Assembly: GCA_963924565.1 (NCBI GenBank)
Contig: OZ004608.1
Location: 4,960,001 to 5,024,000, forward strand
Length of the DNA stretch: 64,000 nucleotides
Origin: Ascidiella aspersa
Taxonomy: Eukaryota
Direction of reading: 5' to 3'
The translations under genes were made by a program, and so were the position numbers. The notes under the pieces were generated by a model. That model worked only from the letters and a program-made list of their open reading frames with translations, made no database searches and was not told the origin of the DNA. Numbering within the stretch: the first letter of the stretch is position 1; each line of letters begins with the position of its first letter. Positions 31,757-61,103 of this stretch are shown piece by piece.

Positions 31757-34700
31757 ATGAAGTTGACATTATGCTTAATTTGTTGCTTAATGCTGGAGTT
31801 TGTTCGGAGCGAATGGGTTTCATTTTACGGGCGTGATTACTTTCTCGAACTCAATACTAAGGGAAGCCGCTATTACGCAGAGAGGAAATGTAGAGAGATG
31901 AACTCCACTCTGGCAACTATGAAACATCTGGCCACCAGAAAACTGCTGACGGATTTCGCCTACGAGGCCTCAAGTAAGATTTATAGCTGTGTGCTCGCTA
32001 AGTAGGAGTGTATACCTTAAAAGGTAGAGTTTAAAACTCTGCCATCTATAGGAATGGAGAATGTTTATCCAATATAAACAGTTTTCGTCTGATATACATT
32101 AGCACCTATTTTTTTAATTTTAACTTGTTTATTTACTTCGGCTAGGATAAGACGTATTATCCTGATCTAAAATGTTCTTCACTGTTATTTTTTTTTTAAG
32201 TCACAAATTTTTTTATGAAATAATTGTCAATAGGCATTAACAACAGTCTAGTCATATCATGCAAAAAAAGGAAAAAAGTTTGCTTGACCAAATTTGTTTT
32301 AAAAGCAAAAAAAAATAAAAATAAAAATTTGTTGTTTCAGTTATAAAAAGTTTTACCTTAATTGGTTCCTTATCGTCAATTTTTACATTAAACTTCGTAC
32401 CAACCAAATGAAAAAAATTCGTCCAGTATTTAATGCTGAAAGCCTAGAAAATACTTTCAGAATCGGTCGAGGCAATAACCGTCGCCTTTGCCAAATCGCA
32501 ATATACGTGAGCTAATGACATCACGCGTGTATATCGCTAAAAAGTTGGTGGGGTTGATTAATATCGATCTCTGGCGTGCTGGTGCAAAGTTATTGACTAA
32601 GTTGCGACACAAACTGTCGCGTCGTGTATTTTTAAACTTTGTCCTGCGACCAGCGATCTATTTTATAAAATGGACATAGACCATTCCTTATAATTGTTTG
32701 AATATTTCAACTTCGTAAAGAAAATTAGTTGAGCGCCTCGCGCATACATCTTGTTCCTGCATCGAATGTAATATCCAGTTAGAATCGTTTTCAATTGCAA
32801 AAAATCCGAGTTTTATCCATGATTAATAGTCGTTGCGGTTGTTATAATAAGATGCGTAAAGTCTACACAGTTCAAATTTCAGAAAACCTTTCTGAGTTTG
32901 GTTTTGGCCCGCGACTAGAAAAAAGTTGCCCACACCTGGTCTAAAGTGAAATATGCACTAGACTAATTGTACAAGTCGGTTTTAGCTAAGCATTTCAACG
33001 ACTACCTTAAAAGGTCAACTGCAATGTCGGCCACAATTTGTCAGTCAAGCAAATGTGTGCGTTAGTTAATCGTTGTGCGGTATATTGTAAGGGAACCGTT
33101 TGTCAGACACGTTACATCAGCGCATAAACATAGCAACCGGCTTCAATGTTTCATGTTGTTTTCGCGTGACGATTAACAGTTTATGCTTCTCACGTTTTAG
33201 TTCGCGCACGACATGAAAATTGAAATATGTTAGAGGCACAGCATTTTTGACAAAACTACAAAACTGATGTTGAAACTAAATAAAGAATTCTTATTCGAAA
33301 CGTTCAAAATGCTACCAACTTTTGTATGGGATTTTATATTTTTACTACATCCTCCAACCACTGTAATGTTCCAAATAAAAATAAAATTTGATCAAGGTTT
33401 TTTTCTCGTAATATGCGGACATAGGTAAATACCATTAAATTATTAGTTGCCCAGAAAATAGGTTTCATTTAAACCTTGCTTGTAAGCTTACTGGCCTATG
33501 AATAAAGTAAATGGTTTGTTTTTCGAAATTATAAAAAGTTTCGCGGCACATCGACTAATCTCTTGGAACACACTAAAGCAGGAGTTCTTAAAAGGAGGCA
33601 AGAAATTATTAAAAATGACGTCATGAATTGAAGTCACAATTAAATAGCCTGTCAGAAATATGCTAATGGTTTAAGTAAAAAGGAGTCTAACGTTCAGTGG
33701 TAAAACGTTTTATTTTTAATTAAATTCTTCTTTTTAATTTGATTACTTTTCAAACGTACACTAACATTTCAATTTGGCCTTCATGGACCCCCTGAAATTA
33801 GTTCACGGACCCCAGTTTAAGAACCCCTGCACTAAAGGAACGGAGCATACAGCGAATTTAAAGAGTAAAAATCTGCCTTTTCATCGTGTTATGTGCTCCT
33901 TTGAACATCGATTTCCAGTATGCAAAACTTGCCAATGTGAACTAAATCGTTACCAATGACGCTTTCACCAAAATCATGTTGGGCTGATTTCTTGTCTGTC
34001 GGATAAATAATCGTGGTGTTTGTAAATTTTATGAATGGGAAGTTGCATGTCCATAACCACATTTTATCACATAACCACATTTTATCTTGGTACATAACCA
34101 CATTTTATCTTGGCAAAGCCTTATTGTTTCTACTTCGGCATTGGATCGGATCGCGATGCTTTAGGTCAAAAATATCGGTTATCGATATCGAAAAAAAGAC
34201 AATTAATCATCGGACAACCCTATTGTAGTTTAAACAAATATTAAAAACAAATTGTTTACCATCTTGCTTTTATCGCAGAGGAAAAGCCGTACTGTTACTA
34301 CTTCGGCCTTAGTCGCATTCCAGGCACCAAAAAGTTCCAGTGGGTTGACGGATCCGTTCTGAACATGAGCAACTCGAACTGGGCGCCACGGGAGCCGAAC
34401 AACAAGCGCTACATGGAACCAGACAACGTCGACTGTGTTGTGATGGGAAGACCATCGCGCAAACAGCTCGGCTTTCCTTGGTACGACATGGGCTGTATGC
34501 AGACCTGCGGCTTCTTTTGTCAACGGATCTTAGGTGCGTATAACTATTTGAAAGTTGATGTCGAAGTCAGTCAACAGTCAATGAACACAATGATGGTTAC
34601 AACAACCTGGTTCTTTAACTCGAATGAATCAAATAAACAAAGGTTACCAACCATATCAATCGACACAAAATAAATACAAAACTCAAATTAGCACCGCAAC

Positions 34701-36443
34701 AAAAGTAACTGGTAAAACCAACAAAGGCACGTCTCAAATGAATGACACAAAAAAGACACGTTTCTGTTCTACTCGGAGCAGTGTGTAATTATAATAAAAC
34801 ACTAAAATGTTAACAGCTATGACCTAAGCCAGTGGTTCTCAACCGGGGTACCGCGGCCCTGGGGTGCAATTTCTAATGTTCCAAGGGTGCCGAGAGAAAT
34901 ATGAGGATCTTTAAGAATCTGATTTTTTGCTCGACTCTATAACTTTTTTGTAAAGATTAAAGTGCAATAAATCCAATTATAACTTCCTAGGTTCTGTAAG
35001 AGTTTATGTGTGCTGTTGTAGTTCCGTTAATTGTGACGTTCTAGTCAATTCCCTACGGAAAATTCCAGTCGGGATGCCTCCAACCCTAAAAGGTTGAGAA
35101 ACACTGACCTAAGTAGTACATGAATTAGATATTTGCATGCAAATGGCCAGGTTGGAAGGTTTAGCGGTGAGGTTCAAACTTGAAAACGCCGCCATACGTA
35201 TAAATGATTTGATTTAAAATATAAAGGCCACAGCATTCGGTAAGATCGACATATAATTCTTTTTCAAACGAGTTAGGAGTAGTGATATCCGCTAATGTCT
35301 GATCAGAGCCGATACCCGATGCCAAGTGTTAGTATCAGTGCTCGTTCGATACTAGGGTGGCATCGGTGCTGATCCGCTATTAAATCAACATAGGAATTTT
35401 AGGCGTGATTTGTGATTTAACGTAGCCATGCTACATGTTTGCTAAACATTTATATTTTGAAATGACTGAAGCTTAGTTTGTTTTTAACTAATATCAAGTC
35501 GAATTCGAGTCCAATTTTTGCCAAAGCAAGTCACGCCTAAGAGGAGTCGGTTGACAACCAGTCATCTGAATAGTCAAGATAAAAAGTTTAAATTAAGCTA
35601 CCATAATTTATAAACAGCGTTTTTTGTGCATAAAGACAACGATATAAAATCTTTTTTTTTTTTTTATATTTCAGGTCATTTGTTATGGATTGAGTCATTT
35701 TATTGTGGCCTAGATCTTTTTATTGCCTAACTTTTTTACGGCTTCAATCTTTGTTATGGATTAGGTCTTTTTTATGGCCTAGGTTTTTTATGGCTTAGAT
35801 CATTTTTATGGTGTAATCATTTTTATGGCTTCATCATTTTTTTATGGCCATTACAACCTTTGATTTGCCAATGCTAACTGTCGGTTGTAAAGCTCATATT
35901 TTTTACCCATTGTTGCAGAGGATGTTGATACTGGCAAGCTATCGTCTCGCATCTACGATCCTTTCGTGAGAAACGTGATCATTGGGGTTGTGATGGGAAT
36001 CATTGCACTTCTGGTCATTGTTACTGTCTTCTCAGTATACTACTACAAAAAGGTGAGTGAGGTTTTTTTTATCGTCAGGTGAAACATTCGAGTTACGATT
36101 TTGGCCGAACTGCAACATTCTGCCTTTTATTAAAATTGTTTTAGATCTTTTATGTTTTTTTAACTTTGTGGTTCTTTTAGATGTTATGACATGGAATAAA
36201 AATACAACAACTGACAGTGTTGGGAACAGGTTAAATCTATATATTATCCTAAACATATTAGCAGTATTATTGTTTTAACTTTACCCAATCCGTGGTAAAA
36301 GTTTTAAAGAGTTATGAAATAATCTTTGTCGACCATTAACCAAAGTGAATATGCAAGCCTATGTTTTCGACTTCCAAGACTTGTGTATAAACACCATTAC
36401 ATGTTTTCTGCAGACTCGAAAGGAGTACAAAGTCAATCAATAG
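31757..36443 (+). CDS. C-type lectin A: signal peptide, CTLD, TM, short tail, ~211 aa. Exons 31757-31973, 34279-34533, 35919-36052, 36414-36443
   Basis: MKLTLCLICCLMLEFVRS signal; CTLD with C...LA, YYFGL, FQWVDGS, WAPREPNN, DCVVM, WYDMGC...FFC; TM VIIGVVMGIIALLVIVTVFSVYYY; tail KKTRKEYKVNQ*. Canonical, phase-compatible splice sites. Confidence 0.88.
33579..33829. mobile_element. hAT-type MITE with perfect 8-bp TSD
   Basis: TIRs CAGGAGTTCTTAAA / TTTAAGAACCCCTG; TSD CACTAAAG on both sides. Confidence 0.88.
34830..35106. mobile_element. hAT-type MITE (inverted sibling of 12954-13257)
   Basis: CAGTGGTTCTCAACC / GGTTGAGAAACACTG; flanks ACCTAAGC / ACCTAAGT; the interior aligns to the reverse complement of the 12954 copy. 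Confidence 0.88.
35685..35850. repeat. Degenerate TTTTATGG(C/A)-based minisatellite in a lectin A intron
   Basis: Repeated ~17-20-bp units of the form TTTTTATGGCxTAGxTC. Confidence 0.75.
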
Positions 36444-39189: not shown

Positions 39190-39400
39190 ACATTGTCTAT
39201 GACGCATTAGTGTACTTCCCCCATAAGAGTTGCCAAATAGCGCAATATAGGCGGTACGATTCATGGAATTAGAAATGTGCGTGATAACTTTGCGGTATGA
39301 CGCAAAACATTATCCTGCTTTCTACTAAAGTGTTTAACTGACCTTTTGCAAGTTCGAAATATTATTTCCTTGATTCATTGAAAACGAACAACTGTTGAGC
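39190..39400 (+). promoter_or_regulatory. Conserved upstream block of lectin B (paralogous to 47075-47290 upstream of lectin C)
   Basis: Shared CTATGACGC.TTAGT..ACTTCC, GAAATGT.CGTGA, TGACGCAAAACA...CTTTCTACTAAAG and TTCCTTG.TTCATTGAAA. Donor TTTAG|GTAAAT near 39479 suggests a 5'UTR exon. Confidence 0.6.
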
Positions 39401-41315
39401 ACGTTACTAAAAACATTGTAGGAAATTTTGTCATCATTGACGAACTTCATCCTGGCGGACTAACAAATGCGATTTTAGGTAAATAAACTATTCTCGTACG
39501 TTCCAATATTTTAATATATTTCATTGCTTTTGCGATACAACAGTTTAGCAAACTATTGAAAAATTAGTTCATGAAAACGTCGCAAGAAATATGTAGCAGT
39601 CCTAAACCCTTACCAAAACTGCCTTTTGCCTTTGGCAAACCTTAGTGTTATGAATCGCTTCATGGTGGTGGTTGTCAAAGTTTTATGGCTTGTGGCACAC
39701 TGAGCAAATAAAACCAAGTAAACGCAGCATACTTTCTACAAAAACGCACACTTATGAATTGACCCTCATCCTATCTACCCGACAAGCAGGGACTGTACGA
39801 AGTGAGGGTACGGAGATCGTTTTTAGTATGTCATTTTGATAAATCTGTTTCAGCCCGAAGGTTGCATGCGTCCTCTGCACCTTTGAAAATTACAATTTTG
39901 GAAACTAAACGATGGAGGCGTTTTTTTGGTTTGCACGAATTGACACATCTTTGTGATATAAAGCTTTTGTATTAAAAGTAATATTTCTCCAACCTAGAAA
40001 TTTACAAATGAACGAACTGTGTGGTGTTCAAAGATTATTTCTTTATGACGTCACGTTCAGAATAACTTTGCGACATCACGGTTCGACGTAAGTCTGTGAC
40101 GTCATCTCTAAATAAATAATCATGCTCCCCTCAAATAAAAATTCTAGATCCGAACCTAGTATTGGTAAATATCATGAATTTATCAGCAGTACACTTTAAC
40201 ATCTCTAGCAAAAAAAGTTAAAAACGGATTGCCAAATGACAATTTTCATATCCGAGTGTTTGTATAGCCTTTGGCTTTTTTTTGGCTTGTTTTTTCCTTT
40301 TTGTTGTTGTCTGGGTGGTGTTAGCAACCCTGTCGTTAGTTTGCGGTAACATGATGGTGTTGTGTGAACGTGAGTTTCATGCAAATAACCTTATTATTAC
40401 TGGAAAATCATCAACAACTACGTCAACATCTCATAGAAAGGAAGTTGTCATAAGCCCGTTTACTAGATGCGAGAGTATCGAAGTATAATGACTTGCCAAA
40501 AAACACGATTTTTCGGCTTTGCTAATTGCACAAGGGCTGCTATCACTATTTAACACCGTTTGGGTGTATAGACTGCGCAGTATAATTGGTCGTAAACGTG
40601 CTGTGCGATAAATCACGTCTATGCGTGGGTTGCAGTAACAAGACGTCGGCATTTACAACTTGCTGCGTGTATATGCTTTTAAAAAAATCTTGGCCGTGCT
40701 TTGAGTCTTCACTCGTGTTTATGGTTTCTAGTCGGCGACGAAACAAAATTTAATAATTGGTACAGAAAAAAAAGTTTAGGTGGACGTAACGCACATTTAT
40801 TGTCAGTAAAAAAATAGTTTTCCTTCGAAAATTACCTCGATAGTCTAATTGTAAGACCATGTATACTATTTTAGATTTTTAAACCTTAGCCTTGGGTTTT
40901 AGTAAGATTACAAAATACGACATACAACAGTTTAAAGTACACTGTTCTGAAAGAACAAAAGCAGAATTAACATAGTTTTAAGTTGCTTTTTGGAAGTTTT
41001 TCGTTTGATAGGCGTGCAATTAATGAGATGACATTTGGGCATAACATAGAAAGTTTGTCAGCACTGGTATAAGTTAACCAAAAAAAGCGATTTTTTTTCA
41101 TGTCTGATGCTGGTTTTAATCGGGTTTTTAAACTTCGTTTTTTGTTTGATTCCGCAGAACAGTGATCGACAAACAGAAACATATAAGGTATAGCCTTGTA
41201 CTGGACACTTACACTATTTATTCTTGGTTATTACAGAGAGGAAACAAACAAATATTCAATCCTCTTTACAATCAATAACGTATAAAGCAAAACAAAGTTT
41301 TATAAACCATTCACC

Positions 41316-44300
41316 ATGAAATGTATTCCTGTTGTACTTTGCCTTTTGCTTCCAATCGGCAAATCCGATTGGATTTCCTTTGAAGGGGCTGATTACTTCT
41401 TCGATTTCGAGACAATAGGCGATCACAGTTTTGTCTTGGACCGATGTGCCGCCATTAACTCGTCACTTGCTTATGTGACAGACGACAAAATCCAAGAGTT
41501 TCTTGCTGGATTAGCTAACCAGCATGCAAGTAAGTGTCGCTTTAATTCTATACAGGGTTACAGAATGGCAACAGATATATTTGGTGCGAATTTTCAGAAG
41601 CATCTCAATCATCAGTAGGCCCACCCAATTCTCAGGGTGGGGTCGGCACTGGGTTTGATATTTTAGAAGTATCTGTTTCGCTCCGATACCCGATTTGTCA
41701 AACAATTTTGGACATAATAGTTTTAATTTCTCAGAAAGTAATACGAAGCATATAATGCTCAATATTATAGTTAAAGTGTTATTTCTTTAGATTTCTTTAG
41801 AGGTTTTAGATTTAGTTATTTTGGGTATGCCATAATTGTTTCCAAAATTATACGGTATCGATATCTCAAAAGAACCTAAATTACAAGGCATTTCCGTAGT
41901 GGAAATAATTTCTAATGAATACGCATGTCCCTTAAAAACAATTAACAAAAAAGTAATACTATCGCATAGCTATAGTATATAGCACAAACGTGGATATAAC
42001 TGTCATATTTCGGCAAAATATGATTGCAGACAAACCGTATTGCTTCTACATCGGTCTGACGAGAACCGGGAACACTCCGTGGTTTCATTGGTCGAACGGC
42101 GCTAACCTCTCAGCAGCCTTGTCACATTGGGACGTACATGAACCCAACAACAAGTTTTTCAAGCATACCGGGAACGAAAATTGCGTCATAATGGGAAAAC
42201 CGGCAGTCAAAGAAACCGACTTTCTTTGGCATGACGTCACATGCAAAAAACACTGCAGCTATTTTTGCGGAGGAGGTGCATTTCCTAGATATTAAGTACA
42301 AAATTGACTATAATTTCATAGTGTATATAGATGTTGGGATTCTTAAGGTTTAAGAACATAGAAACATAAGGTGTATATGGCGTTAATATTAGAATAAAGA
42401 AATATAAATGTGAGGGTTATTTTTTCAAATAACTTACCGATACCGTGTTTTAAACCTATCTTTTTTGAAGTGGCTCCACAAATTCAACCCGAACTATCGA
42501 GTGTTAATAGCACTACGGAAGAGATGCAAACTACGCAAGAAAGTAGCACGCAAACTTCTCAGGAAACGACACAAGAAAGTAAGATTTAATGCCCTTATCA
42601 CCCAAATCCAGTAGTTATTTCTCGCAATTAATTCATCCAAACTACAGGATTTTTGTGTTAAAAGTGGATTAAAATTACCCTATTTCGCGCTATTAATGTG
42701 ATACAATATTTTCATCTTTGACGAAATGCTCACATTATAGTCTCTAGACTTTCGCCAACCAAAGTCAGTGATTTCTAAGTTGTTAGGAGAAATTTATTTC
42801 GCCATAAAATGAAAACTAAACAAAACAAGGCAAACACATAAACTGGTTGATAGCAAAAAAGTAAAACACAATAGAGCTAAAAGCAACAATAGTGGCATGA
42901 GTAAATGTACAGGTTAACAATTATATGCCGACATTATAATTGTTTTTTTACACAGCATCAAGCCAATATCCTGCAACTACGAGTAGTGCCCAGGCAGATT
43001 ATGCAACCAGCACCCAGTCAACCCTACCAACAACTTATACACAAAACCAACCAATTACCAGAGAAACGAAACCAGTATCTTCCACTGTAGCACCTCCAGT
43101 CACTGGAGCAACGCAGAAACCAACCACGACAACAATGAACTCGGGTGAGGGTTAGACTTAGCATCTTACCATGTCAATTACTGTGGTCGATTTTGGTTCA
43201 ATGTGCCTAAACAAAAATCTTAAAAATTAAATTTGTCTGTGGTGAATTATCAAAAAATGATAGATAAGCAGTGTTGCAAAGACTTAGTGTATTTAACTGT
43301 TTACAAATGACTTGATTTTATGTATTTGGACGAATGATTTGACTTGAACTTAAGGCTATGTTTCTAATGACTTGAATGAGATTGTTTAGCTTTATAGTAC
43401 TGGAGATAAGTAGATCTAGCGAAATTAACCTGAAACAGGTACAGCTCTAAAAATTAGGCTATATGGTAGTTCGGACGGTAATACGATTATTTTTATACAG
43501 CATCAAGCCACAATCCTAGGACTACGAGCAGTGGTCAGGCCGATCACGGAACTAGCACCCAATCAACCCTACCAAGAACTTCGCCGCCAAACCAACCAAT
43601 TACCACAGTCACGAAGCCAGTATCTTCCACTGTAGCACTTCCAGTCACTGAAGCAACGCAGAGGCCTGCCACGACAATGATCGATTCGAGCGCAAGTGAG
43701 ACTCAACATCGTATGCTTTCCATTATTCTGGTCATTTTGGCCTAATTTGCCTGAATAATTCTCTATTATTCTTGAATAAAATTTGACTGTTGCGAATTAC
43801 TAAAATCGAATAAATTTAAAGATGTGTTGTAATGGCTTAAGTTAATGGCTCAACTTAAGTGCACTTAACTGTTTTAAAATGAATTGACTGGACTTGTTTC
43901 GGAAAATGATGTTACTTGGATTTTAGTAAGTGGTTCAATTAACTCAGGTTGAAGTCTTGACTTGGGGAAACCGATGCCGTGAAAAAATGGCTTGCCTTGG
44001 ACCCTAATTAATTTCAAAATGACTTGTTTACAACACAGATAAGTAGAGCTAAAATAGTTTTGCTTTTGATAAGAATCCGATTAAACGATTCTTTATATAT
44101 ACAGCATCAACCAGCAAACCCAAAACTACAAGCAATGCTAAGTTAAATAAAGGAACCAGCATCCAATCAACCATTTCAACAACTTCGCCGCAAAACCCCG
44201 CCTTCACAAGAGATACGAAACCAGCAGTTCCCACCAAAGCACAACCAATCTCCGGCTCGATGCACAAACCAGCCTCGACTGTAGTGGGTCGGGTGGAAGG

Positions 44301-45033
44301 TGATACTTTACATCTTAGTCTTTCCACTGTGGCCATTTTGCTTGTACTAGATACATATCTATATACAGGTCAAGAAATATTCTTGGTCGGATGTGTGTTT
44401 GAGTTTAAGATTTTGAACACTTCTGTGTCCGCTAAGTCTTTTTGAGATTGCAAATATTGCAATGTTTTGAAATATTTTGTATAGTGAGAAACGGTTTTGT
44501 TAGATTCTATGAAATAATGAATAAGGGTTATTGTTTAGTTCGGTTGTTTGTCTATACGGCAGTGGTAAAAGTCAACCTTTCTTTAAAAAACTCGCTTTGA
44601 GGTACTTTACGTCGGCAAAAATTGTTTTAGTATTGCCGGGCTGTGTCCTTTTGTCACCAGTCCAGTCCGTCATCCTCAAATGTATTTAAACTAGGTTTTT
44701 TGACTGTATATTTGTGCACTACACTGACCAATTACCTCAGGCTTCCTCAGGTTAATTGTTGTTGGTGCCCCTTTATGACAAAAGTTTGTGAAGTCATCTC
44801 TTAAAGTTTTCATGCCTTGCGGTAAATCGTCTTATCGTTCTAGTAAGAAAATTTTTCTACTTTTATCATATAGTGGCAAATTTTGGTGCCGAGTGTTCTG
44901 CTTGTGTTGGATCAAAGGTTAAATGGTATTCCTTTTCTCAGGTACAACAACGTCTCTTGCAACAAAAATCAGAGGCTCCATCGCTCTTTTTACAACTGGA
45001 ATAATAGTCGGAACAATGGCACTCCTGTTGTAA
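41316..45033 (+). CDS. C-type lectin B: signal peptide, CTLD, Ser/Thr mucin stalk, GPI-like C-terminus, ~414 aa. Exons 41316-41529, 42030-42275, 42471-42578, 42956-43150, 43501-43695, 44105-44299, 44942-45033
   Basis: CTLD motifs FYIGL, FHWSNG, WDVHEPNN, ENCVIM, WHDVTC...YFC. Phase-1 stalk exons. Last exon GTTTSLATKIRGSIALFTTGIIVGTMALLL* is hydrophobic up to the stop. An alternative in-phase donor after 43144 is also possible. Confidence 0.87.
42940..44340 (+). repeat. Triplicated exon-intron unit (three 195-nt mucin exons)
   Basis: Each begins ACAG|CATCAA, is exactly 195 nt, and shares (T/G)TS(T/I)QST...TKP plus similar downstream intron starts. Confidence 0.9.
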
Positions 45034-45751
45034 AAATGCCGGATGTTCTTCCTTAAAATAAACTACTGTATTTCAAACTCAAACGACCAAAAAACGATTT
45101 TATTACTAACGAAATAATACAAGTGCATTTTTTTAGGACCGCAATCGAATAGGTATTTTATCGTTTACTTTAATTTTAAACATTACCTTGCACACAGTGT
45201 TATCGTTTCTTGCAGATATGTACTCTTTTGTATGTAGTTCTTCTTCTTTCAAAATTGAGGCCTTTGTTATTTACTTCTTAGCTAATATATGGGTTGATTT
45301 GTTTGTCGTTCATCTCGCTTGTTGATCGTTAACTGCGTTGTCTCTCTGCTTATTATACATTGCCCATGTACTAGACATGTTCGATTTTGCATTCATACCA
45401 AAAGTTTGGCCTAATATAGACACTGAAACCAGATATTTAGGCAAAAAATATCTCCATCCGATCCGATATTAAATGACGTCATTACGATGTTTAAATAAAT
45501 AAAATAGTGCGATGCTTAACGACACAATATATTGTTTCCTGGGGTGTTATCAAAATTTTGCTTTATAGCGAGATAACCTATAGTTAGCTTCAATTTGTTA
45601 AATTAAAAAATATTCGTATAGTGGACAATGTTGAGCGTGAATTTCTCAACCAATGGGCAAATATAACAGCTGAGTATTGATACTTGACATCCCATATCGC
45701 CATTGATTAGACCTTCCCGAAAACCCCTTTAGTTCACCCCACAAGTTATAC

Positions 45752-46054
45752 CATTGATCCCCAAACTGTGTTCCGCGGCAAACTAGTGTGCCTCGAGATA
45801 TTGTGAAATGTGCCGCAAACTTTTCGTAATTTCGGAAATAAGAGTATTTGTATTTCCAATAAGCATACACGCAAGCATTTAAGACCTAAATATGCACTAT
45901 TCAGTACAAATTAATAATTTTGAGACATTTACACATAGTTTGCCGTGTGTTAAGGGCGATTGTAAAATTACATTGTTATTCTGTTAAAAGTGTGCCGCGA
46001 AATAGTTAAGATTTTTTTAGTCTGCCGCGAGCCAAAAAAGTTTGGGAAACACTG
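45752..46054. mobile_element. hAT-type MITE with perfect 8-bp TSD
   Basis: CATTGATCCCCAAACT / AGTTTGGGAAACACTG; TSD AGTTATAC on both sides. Confidence 0.85.
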
Positions 46055-47074: not shown

Positions 47075-47290
47075 ATATCTGCCTATGACGCGTTAGTACA
47101 CTTCCTGCGTTACTAAAGCTAATAGTGCATTAGGCAGCACACTACTTGGAAATGTACGTGAATACTCCTGCGAGTTCGCACTCCTTGACGCAAAACAAAA
47201 TGCCCTTTCTACTAAAGAGCGTTATAAATCAACAAGGTTTTGTAAATAAGCAGGAAACTGCGAAAATCCTTTCCTTGGTTCATTGAAATG
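47075..47290 (+). promoter_or_regulatory. Conserved upstream block of lectin C (paralogous to 39190-39400)
   Basis: Same ordered motifs as upstream of lectin B, at a similar distance (~2.1 kb) from the ATG. Confidence 0.6.
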
Positions 47291-49193: not shown

Positions 49194-51971
49194 ATGAAAT
49201 TTATATCAACTGTTGTACTTTGCCTTCTGGTCGGAATTGCCAAATCCGATTGGATTTCCTTTGAAGGGGTCGATTACTTCTACGATTTTGGGACGATAGG
49301 CGACCACAGTTTTGTCTTGGACCGATGCGCCGCCCTTAACTCGTCACTTGCTTATGTGACAGACGACAAAATCCAGGAATTTCTTGCTAGATTAGCTGAC
49401 AAGCACGCTTGTAAGTTTCTGGTAAATTTAGATTTTTATTCGGGATAGATCAGTGCAATGATTTCCAGTTGTTAGACACATTGAAATCAACATTTCTAGG
49501 CTGGTGGTTTATCAACGCAAATTAGTTGTTTTGTTAATTACCTATAGGTCTATGATCTGCTAAGCTGTAGTTTTGCAAGGTGTATTAAAATCTACAGGAG
49601 TAAAAAGTGATTCTTCAACCGTATTCTGAACAACTGACAAATTAACCTCTTTCCAGCTTCATTAATTTATTCGCAACCTAGCACCGAAACAAAATCGTTT
49701 CCGAATTATTTTCACTTGCCACAAACCAACTAATGCCTTTGCTGACTTCTATGGATTCGATTCGTACAAAACTCAGAGGATGAAACAATTACTTCATCTT
49801 GGTTAAATTCAGTTAATTTGTTCTCCCTGGATCCATTTGCCAGTTTCTACGACGCAAATATATTTAGGCATTTTAATGTTTTTTAACTTTAATGCTTCAA
49901 AATACCTTAAAATATCTGGTAATGGCATCAAAACTAAATAAGGTATCGAACCTTTCTTAACGGCGAATTATATGTAAACTACACTCAATGTGCATGTAAC
50001 TGTGACAAACTCCTTAAAGGGATTTTTTTTATTAATTAAATAAAATAAGAAGTCTAGTTAAACTTAACACTAAATATCTCTAACATTACATGGAATTTTC
50101 GCAGAGTTCCTAAACTTGCCTAATATCTAATTACAGACAAACCGTATTGTTTCTTCATCGGTCTGACGCGGACCGCCGAAACGCCGTGGTTTCATTGGTC
50201 GAACGGCGCTAACCTCACAGCAGCCCAGTCGCATTGGGCACTTCATGAGCCCAACAACAAGTTTTTCAAGCATACTGGAACCGAGAATTGCGTCATAATG
50301 GGAAAACCGTCCCACAAAGAATCCGACTTCCTCTGGCATGACGTCAAATGCACACAACACTGCAGCTATTTTTGCCAAAGAGGTATAACTTTACTCACTA
50401 CTTTTAGTCACCGGTTACGTTAGCTTAGTGTTTTTCCCTTTTTTTCTTACGGCGATCGAATTTCTAAGCGTAAGTTTATCAGGGAGGCTTTGGCCACCCA
50501 ATTCTCTTCACTAAACTTTTGTAAGCCAAAAATTGATATGATTCATTTGTTAAATTGTTTTCCGGCAATTTTTTTAAATACCAACGTTTCGACCGCTTAT
50601 TCGGGCAATTTTCTTCAGAAGATATATTTGTTCGCCTCTAGTAGTAATTATATTGCCCTGAAGAAGATTGCCTAAAGATTTGCCCCCCTGCCTAAATAGG
50701 TGCTCGAAACGTTGGTGCTTTTATAAAATTTTACCGGAAGAACAATTTTAAATTGCAACAATGCCTGGCAGCAGCAATATATTCACGGATATGATCCAAG
50801 TCTAACGCAATTTTTCTTTAACTTCGGATAAATTTTGCTTAAAATCAATTTCAATAAATCTATTCGGCGACGCAAACTATATCCAACGGTGAGTCAATTT
50901 TGGCAACCAACGGTGGGCTACAAAACACTGTGTTAGCCTAGGGGTGGAATCTGCAACTGCGTTTCAGCAAATTGTCTCTAATTTCAAATCAAGAAACCAG
51001 CACCCAATCGACCTTGTCCACAATTTCGTCGGAAAATCCACCTATGACCAGAGACACGAAACCAGCAGCTTCTACCGAGGCACCACCAGTATCACAAGCG
51101 ATTCCAAAGCCAGCCACAGCAGCTAATTTGGGCGCAGGTGAGACTTTGCATCTTATATATTTAAATGTTTCCACTCTACGTACTGAGCATGTATATTTAC
51201 AGTACTAGGAACTTTTATAGTAGGAATGCTTATTGTACGTTTAGGTTTCAAAAAGATATTGCATTACCGAAAAAAGTCGAGTAATTTGATAGTTTGCGGA
51301 TCCTGCTTCGAGAAACCACTTGTATAGAATTGTCCTGAAAAGTTCAATATAACATGATAACAAGCCAGTGTGTAATGAATACTTTTAAACATAAAAATAA
51401 GGTTAAATTCAGACTTGCAAAAATAGGAACTGCGGTGGTTGTCTCAACATTATTTTAAAATAACTTAATTTACGTTCGGATATCGGAGCCCATACAGAAT
51501 TAGGGATCGTTTGTTGTGTACTTATATAATAAATCTTTACTAATTTTCAACATGGATTATAAAACATTCGTTTAATGCAGTGGTTGGCAACCGTTTTTGT
51601 CGCGGCCCAAATAACTCTTTTCAGAGCTACTGAAGGCCCACTGCGTAAAACTACTACGAAATATGGCCGTGAAAAATTGTTTGTTTTGAGTCGGATGAAT
51701 TAGATACAAATTGCCGATAATGTAAGATGTGACTCTTTGCAGTTAACGAAGTATTAAATGTGGCTCTTAGTCTCTGACTGGTCGGCCACTACTGGTCTGA
51801 CAAATTTGGTGCAGAATGTACCGTGTTGCTACAAATAGTAACTTCATCACTCAACCTTTTCGTACAGACGAAACAACGTCAAACCATTCGCCCGGTAGCC
51901 TAGTCTCTGTAGCTTGGAAGATAACAACTGGAATCATCGCCGGGACAATTCTCATCTCTTTTTTCAATTGA
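49194..51971 (+). CDS. C-type lectin C (close paralog of B): signal peptide, CTLD, short stalk, GPI-like C-terminus, ~236 aa. Exons 49194-49410, 50137-50382, 50994-51137 (acceptor uncertain), 51868-51971
   Basis: SDWISFEGVDYFYDFGTIGDHSFVLDRCAALNSSLAYV..., KPYCFFIGL...WALHEPNN...ENCVIM...WHDVKC...YFC. The stalk exon is homologous to B's 195-nt exons. Ends DETTSNHSPGSLVSVAWKITTGIIAGTILISFFN*. Confidence 0.84.
50552..50748. mobile_element. Palindromic Penelope-like-element remnant carrying minimal hammerhead ribozyme motifs on both strands
   Basis: + strand CTGAAGA (50658-50664) ... CGAAACGTTGG (50705-50715); - strand copy 50581-50618; outer inverted arms AATTGTTTTCCGG / CCGGAAGAACAATT. Confidence 0.65.
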
Positions 51972-53107: not shown

Positions 53108-53230
53108 GTGGCATTATATAAAGACAAATTGTATTGATTCTCCACAAGTAGAAATTTCTATTTCGACCTGTTGAATAACGGTTGTCCAAAAGATTGGAAT
53201 ACAATACAATTTGTCTTTATATAACGCCAC
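53108..53230. repeat. Inverted repeat / small fold-back element
   Basis: 29-bp arms GTGGCATTATATAAAGACAAATTGTATTG / CAATACAATTTGTCTTTATATAACGCCAC with one mismatch. Confidence 0.85.
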
Positions 53231-56843: not shown

Positions 56844-59800
56844 ATGAATTCATTTTCGGGAGCTCTGTTTTGTCTTTTAATCGGCTCCGTCCACTGTGGC
56901 TGGTTTCCTTATAGCGGTGGAGATTTCTTCGTTGATTTTGACAGCAAGGTTAACCAAACCGTCGCAGCGGAAAAATGCGCAGCCCTGAACTCAACCCTGG
57001 CTATCTTGAAGAAAAACGAAACGCAAAGATTTCTCGCCAGCGTGCTCTACAAACACGCAAGTAGGTTTTGCTGAAATCTATGTGTGAATACTTCGATTTT
57101 ATTTTAAATTGGAAAAGTCCGATACTCGTTAAAGATTTCAGAATCAACATTCGGTATTTCTGATAAAAATATTTGCCCGCCACAAATTTGAAATAAATGA
57201 TTAGAACTAGGTAACATTCAGGCGAGAAAAGACCTTGTAAGCCACGATTCTTCGAAATAAACTGGTTAAGGGATTGCAAACTATAAATTCTTCACTTCAC
57301 TTGTTAAATGACTATTTATTAAAAAAAATCTAGGTAAAATTGTTTTTGGAGACCTAGCAATGGCGTTTGTAAACAAGCCTAAAATAAGTTGACATCTGAT
57401 CACTGTTAAACCAAGTATATAGTACGACAACATGTACTAATAACTCGGGGGAATATATTTTGACCAAAAAAATAGGAAATTTTGACCTGAAAAATTAAAG
57501 TTTTGACAAATTTTGACCTGAAAATAATTTATTTTGACAAAATTTTGACCTGTTAGAAATACATTGTTTTAAATTACCTAGGCGTCGTTAATCACGCGTT
57601 TTTTATACAGTATATTGCTCTAATAAAGATATAATACGGTTAAAATGACTTTGAACATATATCAAAACTAATTTTTTTGTTGATAAAATGAACGATAAAT
57701 TTCAAAATAGCTGACTTAAGTTTTTTTTAAATTTTGTAAGCGATTTATGTGCAATTTTATTCGATTTTAACTTACAACGTGACAAATTTGGACAAAAATT
57801 TTTGACTTTTTTTGCCAAGTTAAAAAATATTCGCCTTACTAATAACATGATATGGTGTATCCTTGATCCGTCATTATTGAACTTTCCTATTGTTGAATCT
57901 TTCTTTAAAACGCTTAACATTAAAGTTGAACCCTTATTTTTGAAATTGTACCGCGTCAATGAATTGACTTCCTCAGATACAAAATGCAGGGATTTTTAAT
58001 GTAGCTTGATAATGAATTGCAAAACCATAAAAGTTCGAGTAGATCGACAGCATCTTGATTAAGACGTTTCGATACGAGTTTGTATCATCTTCAGTTAATG
58101 TGAATCAACTTAACTGAGATTGACACAAGTTCTTGTCTAAACGTCTTAATCAAGATGATGCCGCTACTCGACCTTCTTGACTTTATTAGTTTTAAAAGAA
58201 AATCCTTACGAATATTTCGACTTACACTTTTAGAGAAGCCATATTGCTTCTACATCGGTATCACACGAATCGAGCGACGCGACGTTTTTAAGTGGGGCGA
58301 CGGAACCCAAGTGACCCCGGAGCAGGCCCACTGGGCCGACAAGGAACCGAACAACAAGCATCTCAAGGGTACGGGGATCGAAGACTGCGTCACGATGGGC
58401 AGGGCGCCGTCCAAGGACGACCCTACGTTCCCGTGGTACGATATCAGTTGCGCGCGCTCGTGCAGATATATATGCGGTGGAGGTAAGACGATACGATATA
58501 CGTTTTAACTGAGACATTTGTTTTGTTCTGCCTATAGTTAAGGGTAAGAGGAATTAAGTCTGCGAAGCAAACTCAGTCATTTTGGTGATAAATAAGCCTT
58601 TAGAAATTCATCCCCCCCCCAAAAAAAGGAGGATGACATCCTCAGTATAGCCTATAGTAAAAGTCTCTTTCGTTTATGTAATGGGAGAAATATATTTCTA
58701 TGGAAAATAGTGGCCTTTGTCCAGTTTCGGAACTCACAGTTTTTAACCTTGTGTAACCAGTCAGCGCAACGCCAACTGTGTTTCATTAAAAAATAACAAA
58801 ATACTTTAAAACAGTAAATAGTAGACTTTTAATATGTATCACTTGATCGTATATCTCCTGAGCGTTTTCTTGACATTCTATCGAAGTACTACATTTTAAG
58901 AATTCACAGGGTTACCCACCAACCACATAAATATGCTTTTAGCAGTTCAACCTTTGTTCTTTTTATAAATTTTTTTTATAGAATTTCTAAGACCCTTACC
59001 TCTGAATAGGCCTATGGTGTAAATTAATTTTAGTAAAGTCACGCAACCAATGAAACCAAATCTTTTTTAGAGATGCCAGACAACCGAACCGACGTCACAA
59101 CGGGGTCAGAGGTCACTTCACTACAAACCACGTCTCCTGCCAGTGTGGCTACAGTTTCGCGTGAGTAATTTTTTTTTAATTATTTGTTTAATCGTCAAAA
59201 CTTTTGATTTTTACCAACTTCTTGGATAGGTGGTTAATCGCCTAACTAAATATAATAAACAAGAAATAAATGTGATAGCAGAAAACCAGCAAAAGGCTTG
59301 AAAAAAGTCATGCTACACTACACCTCAAATGCAATATTCCGGTAATCCGACTTAACCCTAAGTTCAGCTACTTAAAGATAAATTCGCAAAACCTAGGCAT
59401 TAATCCAATGTGGATACTGGTTTTGCATACGAAGGTGTTGCATACAAATATACTGATGATTTCCCCTAAATTCAGTCCCTGAGCCACTAATTTGCAAATA
59501 TGAATGATGTCATTTTTCAACCCAGATGTTCGCGTTACTATATAGCGGCACCTTGCGGTACAAAATTAAACATTTGACATTCCAAATCAGTCATTGTTAA
59601 TCATTATTGTTTTGCATATAAGCAATAGCCTATCTTTATTCAGCTTAACAATACACATCTATATTAGGTTTAAGGTAATCCGACAATTTTAATTGTAGAA
59701 ACCGACCCGCTAGCAACAGTGAGAGCCAACTTTACACGAAAACCTCGTCGACTGAGACGACCAACAACGACCCCAGATATTACTGGCTCAACTCAGTCCG

Positions 59801-61103
59801 CAGAGCATACTTCAACACAGTCTTTCACTCAATCAAGATTAACTTCACCACAAACAACTCAGTCTGTTACGCAATCAACTCAGTTTACAACGCAAACAAC
59901 TCAGGCTACAACGCAAACAACACAAAGTACAACACAATCAACTCAGGCTACAACGCAATCAACACAACCAACTCGCGCTACAACGCAATCAACACAAAGT
60001 TCAACACAATTAACGGCTACAAAGCAATCAACACAACAAACACAGTCTACAAGACAATCAACTCAGTCTACAACACAGTCAGCTCAGGCTACGACAAAGA
60101 CCACACAACCAACACAGTCTCCGACACAATCAACACAACCAACTCAGGCTCCGACGCAATCAACACAAACGTCAACACAATCAACTCATTCTACGATGAA
60201 GTCCATACAACAAACGCAGGCTACGACGCAATCAGCACAATCTGTAACCCAAAATTCAACGCAACCAACACAAAAATCAACTGAAACTACACAAGTTTCG
60301 CAAGGCGCAACACAGGATAATTCGATGACTGATTCAGATCAAACTAGCGCAGGTAAGATTAAGGGAATACAATGCTGTACAAGCTTTTAAAAGCTGACAC
60401 ACAAATCATTGCTTAATAAATGTGATCCAACGTTTTCAACATATATTTGTTGGACGCCTCGTATATCATAAATATTGCCTCAAAAATGAAATGTATATTT
60501 TCTGTTGTTGCCAAGATAAATAGCGTAACCATTTTAATACGACGTATACGAGCGATTGTGTTGGTTGAAAATTAAGTGATTGGGCCATTTTATTTTTAAC
60601 ACGTTTTCTCTGTTCAGATGCGATCGGAGTAGAAGCCAACAGCACAGCGGCTGGGCTTGCATCTCAACATTGGGACCCAGGATTCGTCGCCCGCGGAACA
60701 ATCGTTGGGGTTGTTGTCGGTGTAACCCTCCTAGCCCTTATCATAATATTGGGCATTCGTTGCAGTAAGGTAAAGTGTAGACCTTGGCCTCCTGATACAT
60801 TAAAAAGCAATCGCACAGGCCTAGGCAGTTTATTTTAGCACAATTTTTGCTCATACTTGTGCGGTTGACCTTATACACTGTATCTGTCCAATTTTCACCC
60901 TTATATTTTCCATCAATTAGATCCGCCTTCGTAACATTCTCAAGCTATCAGTTTATTAATATAGTGGACTGATACAGTTTTTAAGGTATTGTATTGTTGC
61001 ATTAAAGTATACGGCGTTTGTAAGAACGATCTAATTGTATATCATTGTCTTATCCGAACTGGTATACATATTTTTTTTGCAGAAATCGGGCCAGTATGTT
61101 TGA
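56844..61103 (+). CDS. C-type lectin D: signal peptide, CTLD, long Thr/Gln/Ser mucin stalk, TM, short tail, ~460 aa. Exons 56844-57060, 58234-58482, 59071-59160, 59699-60352, 60618-60769, 61083-61103
   Basis: CTLD motifs FYIGI, FKWGDGT, WADKEPNN, EDCVTM, WYDISC...YIC; TQST-type repeats; TM TIVGVVVGVTLLALIIILGI; tail RCSKKSGQYV*. Frame-consistent canonical junctions. Confidence 0.88.
58035..58171. repeat. Long imperfect hairpin in a lectin D intron
   Basis: ~60-bp arms including CATCTTGATTAAGACGTTT / AAACGTCTTAATCAAGATG and CAGTTAA / TTAACTG, around a ~10-nt loop. Confidence 0.85.
59830..60300 (+). repeat. Coding minisatellite (TQST/TQATTQS-type units) in the lectin D stalk
   Basis: Repeated ACTCAGGCTACAACGCAATCA-like ~21-nt units within ORF 59719..60390. 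Confidence 0.85.

What the first reader, a model, noticed from the sequence alone, without database searches (positions are those of the whole stretch)
31757..61103. Four-gene C-type lectin array: one conserved head on interchangeable stalks and anchors
Seen: four tandem paralogs share a signal peptide and a two-exon CTLD split at the same phase-1 intron, all with EPN, KPYC and W(Y/H)D motifs. Downstream they differ by module. A has almost no stalk plus TM and tail; B has a ~230-aa mucin stalk and a hydrophobic end; C has a ~50-aa stalk and a hydrophobic end; D has a ~250-aa TQST stalk plus TM and tail. Established: EPN predicts Man/Glc/GlcNAc/Fuc-type Ca2+ binding, and O-glycosylated stalks set how far a domain projects from the membrane. 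Inference: a lineage-specific receptor set presenting similar glycan-binding heads at graded heights, with signalling/endocytic versus GPI (decoy or sheddable) forms, e.g. for mucus-net or epithelial microbe sensing or blood-cell adhesion. I do not recognise it as a described family.
Basis: partly seen in the sequence, partly recalled or inferred. Interest (0 to 1): 0.78.

Follow-up and report, generated by a model that had tools for sequence, protein, structure and literature searches.

The report
Sea-squirt lectin genes with modular stalks
Four neighbouring genes in a probable sea-squirt genome encode the same sugar-binding C-type lectin head on mucin-like stalks of very different length, ending in a membrane-spanning segment or a cut-short one; they are ordinary members of a large, uncharacterised sea-squirt receptor family.

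Summary
Four + strand genes (A-D, 31757-61103) each have a signal-peptide exon and a second exon that matches Pfam Lectin_C. All four are split by a phase-1 GT-AG intron at the same site and carry EPN, KPYC and WYD/WHD. Frame-consistent models give 211, 412, 236 and 460 codons, with stalks of about 19, 229, 48 and 248 residues.

A and D end in a 21-24-residue membrane helix plus a 10-11-residue tail. B and C end in a 15-19-residue hydrophobic run followed directly by a stop.

RNA support is thin: one run, a few reads on B, and one stalk-to-stalk junction seen in 2 reads.

The four form one clade inside an expansion of at least 102 copies. Other paralogs also have serine/threonine-rich (S/T) stalks. 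Ciona, Clavelina and Phallusia database proteins share the head-stalk-anchor-tail plan. So this is a new member of a known kind.

GPI anchoring, sugar specificity and the "graded heights" idea are untested. The tails show no ITIM, ITAM or YxxΦ motif by my reading.

The scan noted the large array before on other DNA of this genome (s1-805286, s1-794394), and the B/C ends on this stretch (s1-802396).

The parts
31757..31973 (+). Gene A exon 1: signal peptide and first half of the CTLD (helix with first canonical Cys and an N-x-S/T sequon)
   Evidence: ATG, hydrophobic N-terminus, donor A|GTAAGA, phase 1; homologous to exon 1 of B, C, D (E 1e-10 to 4e-10)
34279..34533 (+). Gene A exon 2: second half of the CTLD with KPYC, EPNNK, WYD
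   Evidence: Pfam Lectin_C E 1.2e-6, 29.7 bits; phase 1 in and out
35919..36052 (+). Gene A exon 3: about 19-residue linker plus 24-residue membrane helix followed by KK
   Evidence: Phase-1 acceptor fits the exon-2 donor; mean hydropathy 2.49 over 24 residues
36414..36443 (+). Gene A putative last exon (9 codons and stop); unverified
   Evidence: Phase-0 acceptor after a pyrimidine run, in-frame stop; no RNA or homology support
41316..41529 (+). Gene B exon 1: signal peptide and first half of the CTLD
   Evidence: about two RNA reads in this bin, first mate on the minus strand
42030..42275 (+). Gene B exon 2: CTLD second half with KPYC, EPNNK, WHD
   Evidence: Pfam Lectin_C E 6.8e-7; 85% nucleotide identity to C exon 2; no RNA reads laid here
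42471..42578 (+). Gene B exon 3: S/T/Q-rich stalk exon, phase 1-1
   Evidence: 40% S+T; its donor is joined to exon 4 in 2 RNA reads (table 5c)
42956..43144 (+). Gene B exon 4: stalk exon, first of three tandem copies, phase 1-1
   Evidence: RNA joint 42578 to 42957 with one other letter at the first base
43501..43695 (+). Gene B exon 5: stalk exon, second copy
   Evidence: 69% protein identity to exon 4, flanking splice regions also alike; sparse RNA reads, one running into the intron
44105..44299 (+). Gene B exon 6: stalk exon, third copy
   Evidence: 44% protein identity to exon 4; no RNA reads laid
44942..45033 (+). Gene B last exon: short spacer, then 19 hydrophobic residues and a stop (GPI-signal-like; truncated membrane helix)
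   Evidence: Phase-1 acceptor; mean hydropathy 1.95 over 19 residues, nothing after them; aligns with the start of the A and D helices through a shared GxxxG; homologous to C's last exon
49194..49410 (+). Gene C exon 1: signal peptide and first half of the CTLD
   Evidence: 85% nucleotide identity to B exon 1
50137..50382 (+). Gene C exon 2: CTLD second half with KPYC, EPNNK, WHD
   Evidence: Pfam Lectin_C E 2.7e-6
50994..51137 (+). Gene C exon 3: single stalk exon, a shortened copy of B exons 4-6
   Evidence: 58% protein identity to B exon 4 over the shared part; 69-71% nucleotide identity; phase 1-1
51868..51971 (+). Gene C last exon: spacer, 15 hydrophobic residues, Asn, stop (GPI-signal-like)
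56844..57060 (+). Gene D exon 1: signal peptide and first half of the CTLD
   Evidence: weak Lectin_C match, 15.9 bits
58234..58482 (+). Gene D exon 2: CTLD second half with KPYC, EPNNK, WYD
   Evidence: Pfam Lectin_C E 2.2e-8, 35.2 bits; best solved relatives are mannose receptor CRD-4 (E 1.1e-6) and mincle
59071..59160 (+). Gene D exon 3: 30-codon S/T-rich stalk exon, phase 1-1
59699..60352 (+). Gene D exon 4: 218-codon T/Q/S repeat stalk
   Evidence: 47% S+T, 21% Q; tandem repeats of period 21, 42, 72 and 102 nt at 59849-60294; phase 1-1; no Pfam family
60618..60769 (+). Gene D exon 5: 25-residue linker plus 21-residue membrane helix followed by RCSK
   Evidence: Mean hydropathy 2.74 over 21 residues; phase-1 acceptor, possible phase-0 donor
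61083..61103 (+). Gene D putative last exon (6 codons and stop); unverified. If the donor at 60769 is not used, the frame reads on for 22 codons to a stop at 60836-60838

Best explanation
The region is a four-gene tandem subfamily of type I, single-domain C-type lectin (CTLD) surface proteins of a probable ascidian.

Shared head. Each gene starts with a signal peptide and a two-exon CTLD head. The head keeps the four canonical cysteines, two extra ones, an EPN motif and a W-(Y/H)-D motif. It most likely binds glycans at the usual Ca2+ site 2 (inferred).

Modular stalks. Behind the head, each gene has picked up a different number of phase 1-1 exons that encode Ser/Thr/Pro/Gln-rich, presumably O-glycosylated stalk. 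The stalk grew in two ways:
- tandem duplication of one roughly 190-nt exon: three copies in B, one shortened copy in C;
- expansion of 21-nt repeats inside one exon in D.

Anchors. A and D keep a full membrane helix with a very short tail. In the B/C lineage the homologous exon stops 9-11 residues after a conserved GxxxG. That leaves a 15-19-residue hydrophobic C-terminus with no tail, which is the outline of a GPI-attachment signal. B and C are therefore probably lipid-anchored or released forms (inferred).

What is shown: the sequence anatomy, paralogy, purifying selection on the B/C heads, and one stalk splice junction.
What is inferred: the head-to-stalk joins, glycosylation, the type of anchor, the ligand and the biological role.
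For: - Four copies only, same strand, same phase-1 intron site.
- Lectin_C above the cut-off in all four.
- Invariant head columns include the cysteines, EPNNK and W-x-D.
- Every modelled exon has GT-AG borders and fits the phase of its neighbours. Each model ends in an in-frame stop: 211, 412, 236 and 460 codons.
- Stalk exons are 32-47% S+T and match no Pfam family above its cut-off.
- B exons 4-6 and C exon 3 align together with their splice-site flanks.
- D exon 4 carries 21-nt-based tandem repeats.
- B versus C heads: dN/dS 0.235 at dS 0.41, from per-exon counts summed.
- The terminal exons of B and C align with the helices of A, D and paralog L001 through an invariant GxxxG, and stop early. 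They are homologous to each other.
- RNA: all reads in B exon bins have the same orientation, and 2 reads join 42578 to 42957, the modelled exon 3 to exon 4 junction.
- The same plan is seen in Ciona XP_026691695.1 (609 aa: head, about 390-aa S/T stalk, helix, tail), Ciona XP_002129946.1 (245 aa, short stalk), Ciona XP_026690489.1, Phallusia CAB3231619.1 and Clavelina XP_076811588.1. A shorter Clavelina isoform lacks the helix.
- The four form one group in the tree, with support 96/89.
Against: - No read joins head exon 2 to any stalk exon. No reads at all were laid on B exons 2 and 6. Only about 6% of one RNA run was read, and 114 of the 116 laid reads fit only in part, mostly on a repeat.
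- A, C and D were not tested with reads.
- The last exons of A and D are very short and rest on splice-site reading alone.
- One read runs from B exon 5 into the modelled intron.
- C has a rival 3' end through a 64-nt intron that would give a helix plus a basic tail.
- WND is not conserved, and A also lacks one acidic Ca2+ ligand.
- No GPI, signal-peptide or glycosylation predictor was available. Hydropathy counts are my own script.
- The D repeat exon is open in more than one frame, so its frame rests on the splice phases.
Confidence: 0.62

Rival explanations
1. B and C are not GPI-anchored. The early stop simply destroyed the membrane anchor, so they are secreted mucin-like lectins or copies on the way to decay.
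For: - The hydrophobic ends are only 15-19 residues, with lower mean hydropathy (1.95-2.0) than the helices of A and D (2.49-2.74).
- Expression of B in the one RNA run is at trace level.
- A Clavelina relative has a database isoform that ends before the helix, so soluble forms exist in the family.
Against: - All 7 exons of B and all 4 of C keep open frames, GT-AG borders and matching phases.
- The heads are under purifying selection (dN/dS 0.235).
- Both copies kept a hydrophobic end within two codons of each other after dS of about 0.4.
- A hydrophobic C-terminus with no tail after a signal peptide is the standard GPI-signal outline (general knowledge, recalled).
Confidence: 0.25
2. C (and perhaps B) use another 3' end. 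In C, a 64-nt intron right after the stalk exon (51138-51201) leads to 51202-51325, which encodes a 16-residue hydrophobic stretch, a basic stop-transfer run and a tail of about 25 residues. C would then be a membrane-spanning receptor like A and D.
For: - GT-AG borders and the correct phase 1; the open frame runs to a stop at 51323-51325.
- By my reading, the hydrophobic stretch begins with a short motif like that of D's helix.
Against: - The homologous piece in B is degenerate, with an 8-residue hydrophobic run.
- All 17 other modelled introns are 195-2305 nt by the coordinates, so a 64-nt intron would be unusual here.
- T-rich non-coding DNA gives hydrophobic windows by chance: 7 windows at or above the threshold in about 17 kb of intergenic sequence.
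- The downstream terminal exon is shared by B and C.
Confidence: 0.1
3. The heads are not Ca2+-dependent Man-type sugar binders. They recognise another sugar class, a protein or a crystal surface, or the glycosylated stalk itself is the working part (a sialomucin-like ligand or barrier) and the head is secondary.
For: - The Asn of WND, a Ca2+ and sugar ligand in mannose-binding protein (recalled), is Tyr or His in all four. A also has Val where B, C and D have the Glu before the second canonical Cys.
- A review table lists lectins in which such motifs do not predict Ca2+ dependence (passages).
- The stalk makes up more than half of B and D.
Against: - EPNNK is invariant in four genes that are otherwise 42-49% identical outside the B/C pair.
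- An EPN/WYD fish lectin binds mannose and galactose, and EPN/WHD bivalve lectins are listed as Ca2+-dependent (passages).
- The closest solved relatives are sugar-binding domains: mannose receptor CRD-4 and mincle.
Confidence: 0.3
4. The gene models are wrong. The S/T-rich open frames are not joined to the lectin exons; they are chance low-complexity frames or parts of separate genes.
For: - No read joins exon 2 to a stalk exon.
- The D repeat region is open in more than one frame.
Against: - Nine consecutive stalk exons across three genes all have phase 1-1 borders that fit the phase-1 donor of exon 2 and the phase-1 acceptor of the anchor exon.
- They lack start codons with signal peptides of their own.
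- An exon 3 to exon 4 junction is seen in RNA.
- The same head-stalk-helix order occurs in Ciona, Clavelina and Phallusia database proteins and in paralogs L001 and L003.
Confidence: 0.07

Closest known systems
Ascidian type I single-CTLD proteins in public databases: Ciona intestinalis XP_026691695.1 (auto-named 'flocculation protein FLO11'), XP_002129946.1 ('C-type lectin domain family 4 member G-like'), XP_026690489.1; Phallusia mammillata CAB3231619.1; Clavelina lepadiformis XP_076811588.1 / XP_076811592.1
   Same: - Signal peptide, one CTLD with the same landmark stretch before the second half, and EPN (QPN in Phallusia).
- A Ser/Thr-rich stalk of very different length (about 12 to about 390 residues), a membrane helix and a tail.
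- One Clavelina isoform lacks the helix.
- They are among the best single-domain hits of the profile search, at roughly 51-66 bits.
- Ciona XP_026691695.1 is among the nearest rows to the four window genes in the tree.
   Different: - No 1:1 orthology is shown; that node is unresolved.
- They lack the Cys of KPYC and the extra Cys four residues before the last one. Most have WND or other variants.
- Their tails are longer and tyrosine-rich.
- None of the 16 proteins I read (12, 4) ends in a hydrophobic run without a tail.
- All carry automatic names only. I found no functional study.
The array of more than 100 CTLD receptor genes on the same chromosome (earlier scan notes s1-805286, s1-794394)
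   Same: - Same chromosome: 98 of 102 head-exon matches lie on contig C2, 83 of them at 5.87-7.54 Mb by my count.
- Same exon layout of the head.
- S/T-repeat stalk exon and membrane exon in the members I opened (L003, L001).
   Different: - The four window genes form their own clade.
- The array members I sampled have no Cys at the KPYC place and often carry QPD instead of EPN.
- According to the earlier notes, array members have longer tyrosine-motif tails. I did not test that.
Vertebrate CTLD group XIV (thrombomodulin, CD93, CLEC14A, CD248)
   Same: Type I membrane proteins with an N-terminal CTLD, a Ser/Thr-rich mucin-like stalk, one helix and a short tail (abstracts of PMC6852297 and PMC9167495 seen in the listing; the rest recalled).
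   Different: - Group XIV has EGF-like repeats between head and stalk. No such domain is found here.
- No sequence evidence of orthology: the best solved relatives are mannose receptor CRD-4 and mincle.
- The window heads keep EPN.
Macrophage mannose receptor CRD-4 and mincle (closest solved structures)
   Same: Closest CTLD sequences with a solved structure: E 1.1e-6 and 1.6e-5. EPN, the Glu before the second Cys and the Asp of WND align.
   Different: - Those are a multi-CTLD type I receptor and a type II receptor, respectively.
- They have WND.
- The window heads have a longer loop after EPN and two extra cysteines.
Paralog or isoform pairs that differ in membrane-spanning versus GPI anchoring (for example Fc gamma RIIIA/IIIB, CD58, NCAM; recalled, not looked up)
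   Same: The same ectodomain is presented either on a helix with a tail or on a short hydrophobic C-terminus that is exchanged for a lipid anchor.
   Different: - In those cases the anchor type is shown by experiment. Here it is inferred from sequence only.
- No paper with the phrase 'GPI-anchored C-type lectin' was found (exact-phrase search of one library).

Membership tests
C-type lectin-like domain (Pfam PF00059 Lectin_C) | Match to the family profile above the curated cut-off | tested here: met
   Exon-2 frames of A, B, C and D score 29.7, 30.4, 28.5 and 35.2 bits against a cut-off of 22.6. Exons were searched apart, so each match covers only profile positions from about 30 to 107.
C-type lectin-like domain (Pfam PF00059 Lectin_C) | Four canonical cysteines (helix 1; strand 3; after strand 4; strand 5) and the WIGL-type landmark | tested here: met
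   One invariant Cys in exon 1 and invariant Cys columns in exon 2. The landmark is present as a F/Y-Y/F-I/F-G-L/I variant (alignment to 1egg). Two further invariant Cys may form a third disulfide (inference, not tested).
Ca2+-dependent Man/Glc-type carbohydrate-recognition domain | EPN motif at Ca2+ site 2 | tested here: met
   EPNNK is invariant in all four and aligns with EPN of mannose receptor CRD-4.
Ca2+-dependent Man/Glc-type carbohydrate-recognition domain | WND motif and the Glu before the second canonical Cys (the remaining site-2 ligands) | tested here: not met
   WYD in A and D, WHD in B and C. The Glu is present in B, C and D but is Val in A. EPN/WYD and EPN/WHD lectins are reported as sugar-binding or Ca2+-dependent (passages), so function is not excluded.
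Ca2+-dependent Man/Glc-type carbohydrate-recognition domain | Measured Ca2+-dependent sugar binding | not testable with these tools
   Needs recombinant protein.
Ascidian type I single-CTLD stalked receptors (database proteins, no published name found) | Signal peptide, one CTLD, S/T-rich stalk, one membrane helix and a cytoplasmic tail, in that order | tested here: met
   Met by the exon models of A and D. For B and C the helix is cut short and there is no tail. Compared with Ciona, Clavelina and Phallusia proteins.
Ascidian type I single-CTLD stalked receptors (database proteins, no published name found) | Closest relatives by sequence are ascidian members | tested here: met
   8 of 10 proteins looked up are in 6 named clusters, all from Ciona, Phallusia, Clavelina or Styela; the other 2 are unnamed ENA contigs. 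The tree places the window clade among them, but the node is unresolved.
Vertebrate CTLD group XIV | EGF-like repeats (and a sushi-like domain) between the CTLD and the mucin stalk | tested here: not met
   No Pfam family above its cut-off in 10 of the 13 downstream exons, each searched apart; D exon 3 and the two putative last exons were not searched.
GPI-anchored surface proteins | N-terminal signal peptide; C-terminal hydrophobic run of about 15-20 residues at the very end; no cytoplasmic tail; small residues about 8-12 positions upstream | tested here: inconclusive
   B has a 19-residue and C a 15-residue hydrophobic run, with zero and one residue after it. Small residues (Ser, Gly, Ala) lie upstream. 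This is a rule-of-thumb check by my own script; no trained predictor was available, and the last-exon choice is unverified by RNA.
GPI-anchored surface proteins | Release by PI-PLC or lipid labelling | not testable with these tools
   Bench experiment.

The most novel reading that the evidence does not exclude
B and C are true GPI-anchored C-type lectins, created when the membrane exon of a type I lectin receptor was cut short by a stop codon. Together with A and D they form a working 'height series'. One conserved glycan-binding head would be held at roughly four distances from the membrane by stalks that are tuned through duplication or skipping of phase 1-1 exons and through repeat expansion. 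Lipid-anchored (raft-resident or sheddable) and helix-anchored forms would play different roles in ascidian self/non-self or microbe recognition.
Probability: 0.25. Interest if true: 0.55.

Novelty: new member of a known kind. Interest (0 to 1): 0.33.

Why it matters
Ascidians are the closest invertebrate relatives of vertebrates. They lack antibody-based immunity and have expanded lectin receptor families whose working logic is unknown.

This small clade is a compact natural experiment: the head is held nearly constant while stalk length (about 19 to 248 residues) and anchor type vary. It also shows in plain sequence how such variation arises:
- duplication of a frame-symmetric exon;
- repeat expansion inside an exon;
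- an early stop in the membrane exon.

If B and C prove to be GPI-anchored, they would be a rare case of a lipid-anchored C-type lectin.

As it stands, this is an annotation-level result in a family already visible in Ciona and other ascidian gene sets, with no expression pattern, ligand or function.

Tried and rejected
- **Read-through ends.** I first read the hydrophobic stretches that follow the donors of B exons 5 and 6 and of C exon 3 as possible C-termini. I rejected this as the main model. Each stalk exon has a good phase-1 donor, and the read-through tails end in polar residues.
- **64-nt intron.** A 64-nt intron after C exon 3 (and after B exon 6) leads to a helix-like piece. I kept it only as a rival for C, because it is degenerate in B.
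- **Further membrane exons.** A hydropathy scan of the four intergenic stretches found 7 windows at or above the threshold. None was like the helices of A and D.
- **Tail-exon homology.** tblastx between the four downstream regions found only weak matches, apart from the shared B/C terminal exon.
- **Word search.** The search with the A exon-2 frame gave 2 candidates and none scored. This genome's own proteins seem absent from the public protein sets; no self-like hit appeared either.
- **Extra disulfide.** I considered whether the two extra cysteines co-vary across paralogs. They do not do so cleanly: several array members have one without the other. The third disulfide stays an inference.
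- **RNA genes.** tRNA and Rfam scans of 31000-64000 found nothing.
- **Structure prediction.** Not run. A full head needs exons 1 and 2 joined, a step the operators ruled out, and the tool returns no coordinates with which to measure Cys distances. Spliced models were searched exon by exon throughout.
- **Literature.** Six searches and passages from four papers gave no description of this ascidian family. The library lacks most subscription journals. I did not ask for supplements, which are closed and might hold gene lists.

Full report
**Observation**

The window is G000:C2:4960001-5024000 of a 308.6-Mb assembly in 75 contigs. GC is 32-41% and there are no N runs.

tblastn of each head exon against the whole window finds exactly four places, all on the + strand. 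B and C are 82% identical in protein. All other pairs are 31-48% identical.

Pfam Lectin_C matches the exon-2 open frame of A, B, C and D at E 1.2e-6, 6.8e-7, 2.7e-6 and 2.2e-8 (28.5-35.2 bits, cut-off 22.6). Exon 1 alone gives only a sub-threshold match in D.

The exon1/exon2 border has a GT donor one base into a codon and an AG acceptor just before the codon for the Lys of KPYC in all four. The exon-2 donors are again phase 1. EPNNK, KPYC, W-x-D and six cysteines of the mature head are invariant.

**Gene models**

Reading splice sites and phases by eye and by script, I get models in which every exon has GT-AG borders, fits its neighbour's phase and ends in an in-frame stop.

| Gene | Exons | Codons |
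|---|---|---|
| A | 31757-31973, 34279-34533, 35919-36052, putative 36414-36443 | 211 |
| B | 41316-41529, 42030-42275, 42471-42578, 42956-43144, 43501-43695, 44105-44299, 44942-45033 | 412 |
| C | 49194-49410, 50137-50382, 50994-51137, 51868-51971 | 236 |
| D | 56844-57060, 58234-58482, 59071-59160, 59699-60352, 60618-60769, putative 61083-61103 | 460 |

All stalk exons are phase 1-1, so skipping or duplicating any of them keeps the frame.

**RNA**

Only one RNA run of the same species label exists among the served runs (X4, raw reads). X1 and X2 are DNA of the same label, and X3 carries another label with near-identical sequence.

My single read-laying run covered gene B and its downstream region, 41250-47249:
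- About 6% of X4 was read and 116 reads were laid.
- 114 of them fit only in part, mostly on a high-copy repeat at 45850-46650.
- In the bins holding B exons 1, 3, 4 and 5, and in the bins at 44850-45249, mean depth is 0.12-1.4. All of it comes from pairs whose first mate lies on the minus strand.
- Two reads join 42578 to 42957 with one other letter at the first base. This is the modelled exon 3 to exon 4 junction. It appears in table 5c only and is below the tool's 3-read listing rule.
- No reads lie on exons 2 and 6, and one read runs from exon 5 into the intron.

B is therefore transcribed at trace level in that sample and one stalk junction is right. The head-to-stalk join and the 3' end are not shown. 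A, C and D were not tested.

**Heads**

The closest solved sequences are mannose receptor CRD-4 (1egg, E 1.1e-6) and mincle (E 1.6e-5), among 24 distinct PDB sequences at E up to 0.01.

In that alignment EPN, the Glu before the second canonical Cys and the Asp of WND line up. The Asn of WND is Tyr in A and D and His in B and C. A also has Val in place of the Glu.

Passages I read report two relevant cases. A fish lectin with EPN/WYD binds mannose and galactose (PMC11084180). A review table lists bivalve EPN/WHD lectins as Ca2+-dependent, but also notes that these motifs do not always predict Ca2+ dependence (PMC12842671). Ca2+-dependent glycan binding is thus likely but not assured.

B and C heads differ at dN 0.096 and dS 0.407, giving dN/dS of 0.235. 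This argues that both are kept by selection.

**Stalks**

Stalk exons are 32-47% Ser+Thr with 5-15% Pro, and 20-21% Gln in B exon 3 and D exon 4. No Pfam family passes its cut-off in 10 of the 13 downstream exons that I searched apart; D exon 3 and the two putative last exons were not searched.

B exons 4, 5 and 6 and C exon 3 are copies of one exon. Protein identity to B exon 4 is 69%, 44% and 58%, the splice-site flanks align too, and C's copy starts 16 codons later.

D exon 4 is built of tandem repeats with periods of 21, 42, 72 and 102 nt.

Stalk length therefore changed by exon duplication in B and by repeat expansion in D.

**Anchors**

- A exon 3 has a 24-residue helix (mean hydropathy 2.49) followed by KK.
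- D exon 5 has a 21-residue helix (2.74) followed by RCSK.
- B's last exon ends in 19 hydrophobic residues (1.95) and a stop.
- C's last exon ends in 15 hydrophobic residues (2.0), an Asn and a stop.

These four exons, plus the helix exon of paralog L001, align through an invariant GxxxG. B and C stop 9-11 residues after it.

The B and C terminal exons are homologous, and their stops lie two codons apart. The truncation therefore probably predates or closely followed the B/C duplication and has been kept since.

The outline fits a GPI signal: signal peptide, small residues upstream, a hydrophobic end and no tail. No predictor or experiment backs it.

The tails modelled for A and D are 10-11 residues. 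By my reading they have no YxxΦ, ITIM or ITAM pattern.

**Context**

The D head exon finds 102 places in the genome at E up to 0.001, from 146 candidates scored. Of these, 98 lie on contig C2, and by my count 83 lie at 5.87-7.54 Mb and 9 at 2.4-2.8 Mb. This fits earlier notes s1-805286 and s1-794394 on an array of more than 100 genes.

In a tree of 34 rows, the four window genes form one group with the shape (D,(A,(B,C))). Support is 96/89, and they form one group in 93% of 200 bootstrap trees. The 34 rows are 4 window heads, 20 of the 98 other genomic copies (mostly top matches), 8 public ascidian pieces and 2 outgroup rows.

Paralogs outside the window also have S/T stalks. L003 has a 7-residue-repeat exon. 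L001 has duplicated stalk exons and then a helix exon.

**Relatives elsewhere**

A profile of the four exon-2 pieces was scored against 1.84 billion representative proteins. It gave 553 hits at E up to 0.001, 70 at up to 1e-10 and 3 at up to 1e-30. The top hits are multi-CTLD proteins whose scores add up over many domains, and no near-identical protein was found.

I looked up 10 hits. Eight are in six named clusters, all ascidian (Ciona, Phallusia, Clavelina, Styela), and two are unnamed ENA contigs.
- Ciona XP_026691695.1 (609 aa) has the plan of D.
- Ciona XP_002129946.1 (245 aa) has the plan of A.
- Clavelina has one isoform with the helix and one without.

All carry automatic names. Six literature searches found no study of this family.

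**Verdict**

The anatomy is confirmed. The most likely reading is a small clade of ascidian type I lectin surface proteins with modular, presumably O-glycosylated stalks and two anchor types.

It is a new member of a family already visible in other ascidian gene sets and in this genome's large array. The possible GPI anchoring of B and C is the only feature that would stand out. Function, ligand and expression remain unknown.

Noticed in passing
window 34098-34241 (+), core 34116-34142: A 9-residue relic of a CTLD exon-2 start (KPYC-type landmark) lies about 140 nt upstream of gene A's real exon 2, next to a 23-nt tandem repeat at 34052-34113. It looks like a partial exon duplication.
   Followed up: partly
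window 45850-46050 and 46450-46650: A very high-copy repeat sits between genes B and C. Summed DNA word depth is about 27,000-29,000 in X1, and RNA reads have loose ends on both sides. There is no tRNA or Rfam match.
   Followed up: partly
window 51138-51325 (+) and 44300-44445 (+): Right after C exon 3, a 64-nt GT-AG interval leads to an open frame that encodes a helix-like stretch, a basic run and a tail of about 25 residues. The homologous piece after B exon 6 is degenerate. It could be an alternative or ancestral membrane end.
   Followed up: partly
L001:3617-4977 (G000:C2:28.4 Mb) and L003:2781-2945 (G000:C2:6.84 Mb): Paralogs elsewhere in the genome also carry S/T-rich stalks made by exon duplication (L001, two near-identical exons) or by 7-residue repeats (L003). 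L001 then has a helix exon.
   Followed up: partly
window 35919-36052, 44942-45033, 51868-51971, 60618-60769; L001:4819-4977: All the membrane and terminal exons share a GxxxG at the start of the hydrophobic run. This motif is often linked to helix-helix association (recalled).
   Followed up: no
window 41520-41541: Five 'other letters' in one X1 contig laid on the end of B exon 1 match, at the three exonic places, the letters of gene C in the junction print; the two in the intron I did not check. I read this as a paralog laid across, not an allele.
   Followed up: yes
window 40240-40485 (+): An 82-codon open frame with a strongly hydrophobic stretch lies between genes A and B. It has no match to the lectin exons and I did not examine it further.
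   Followed up: no
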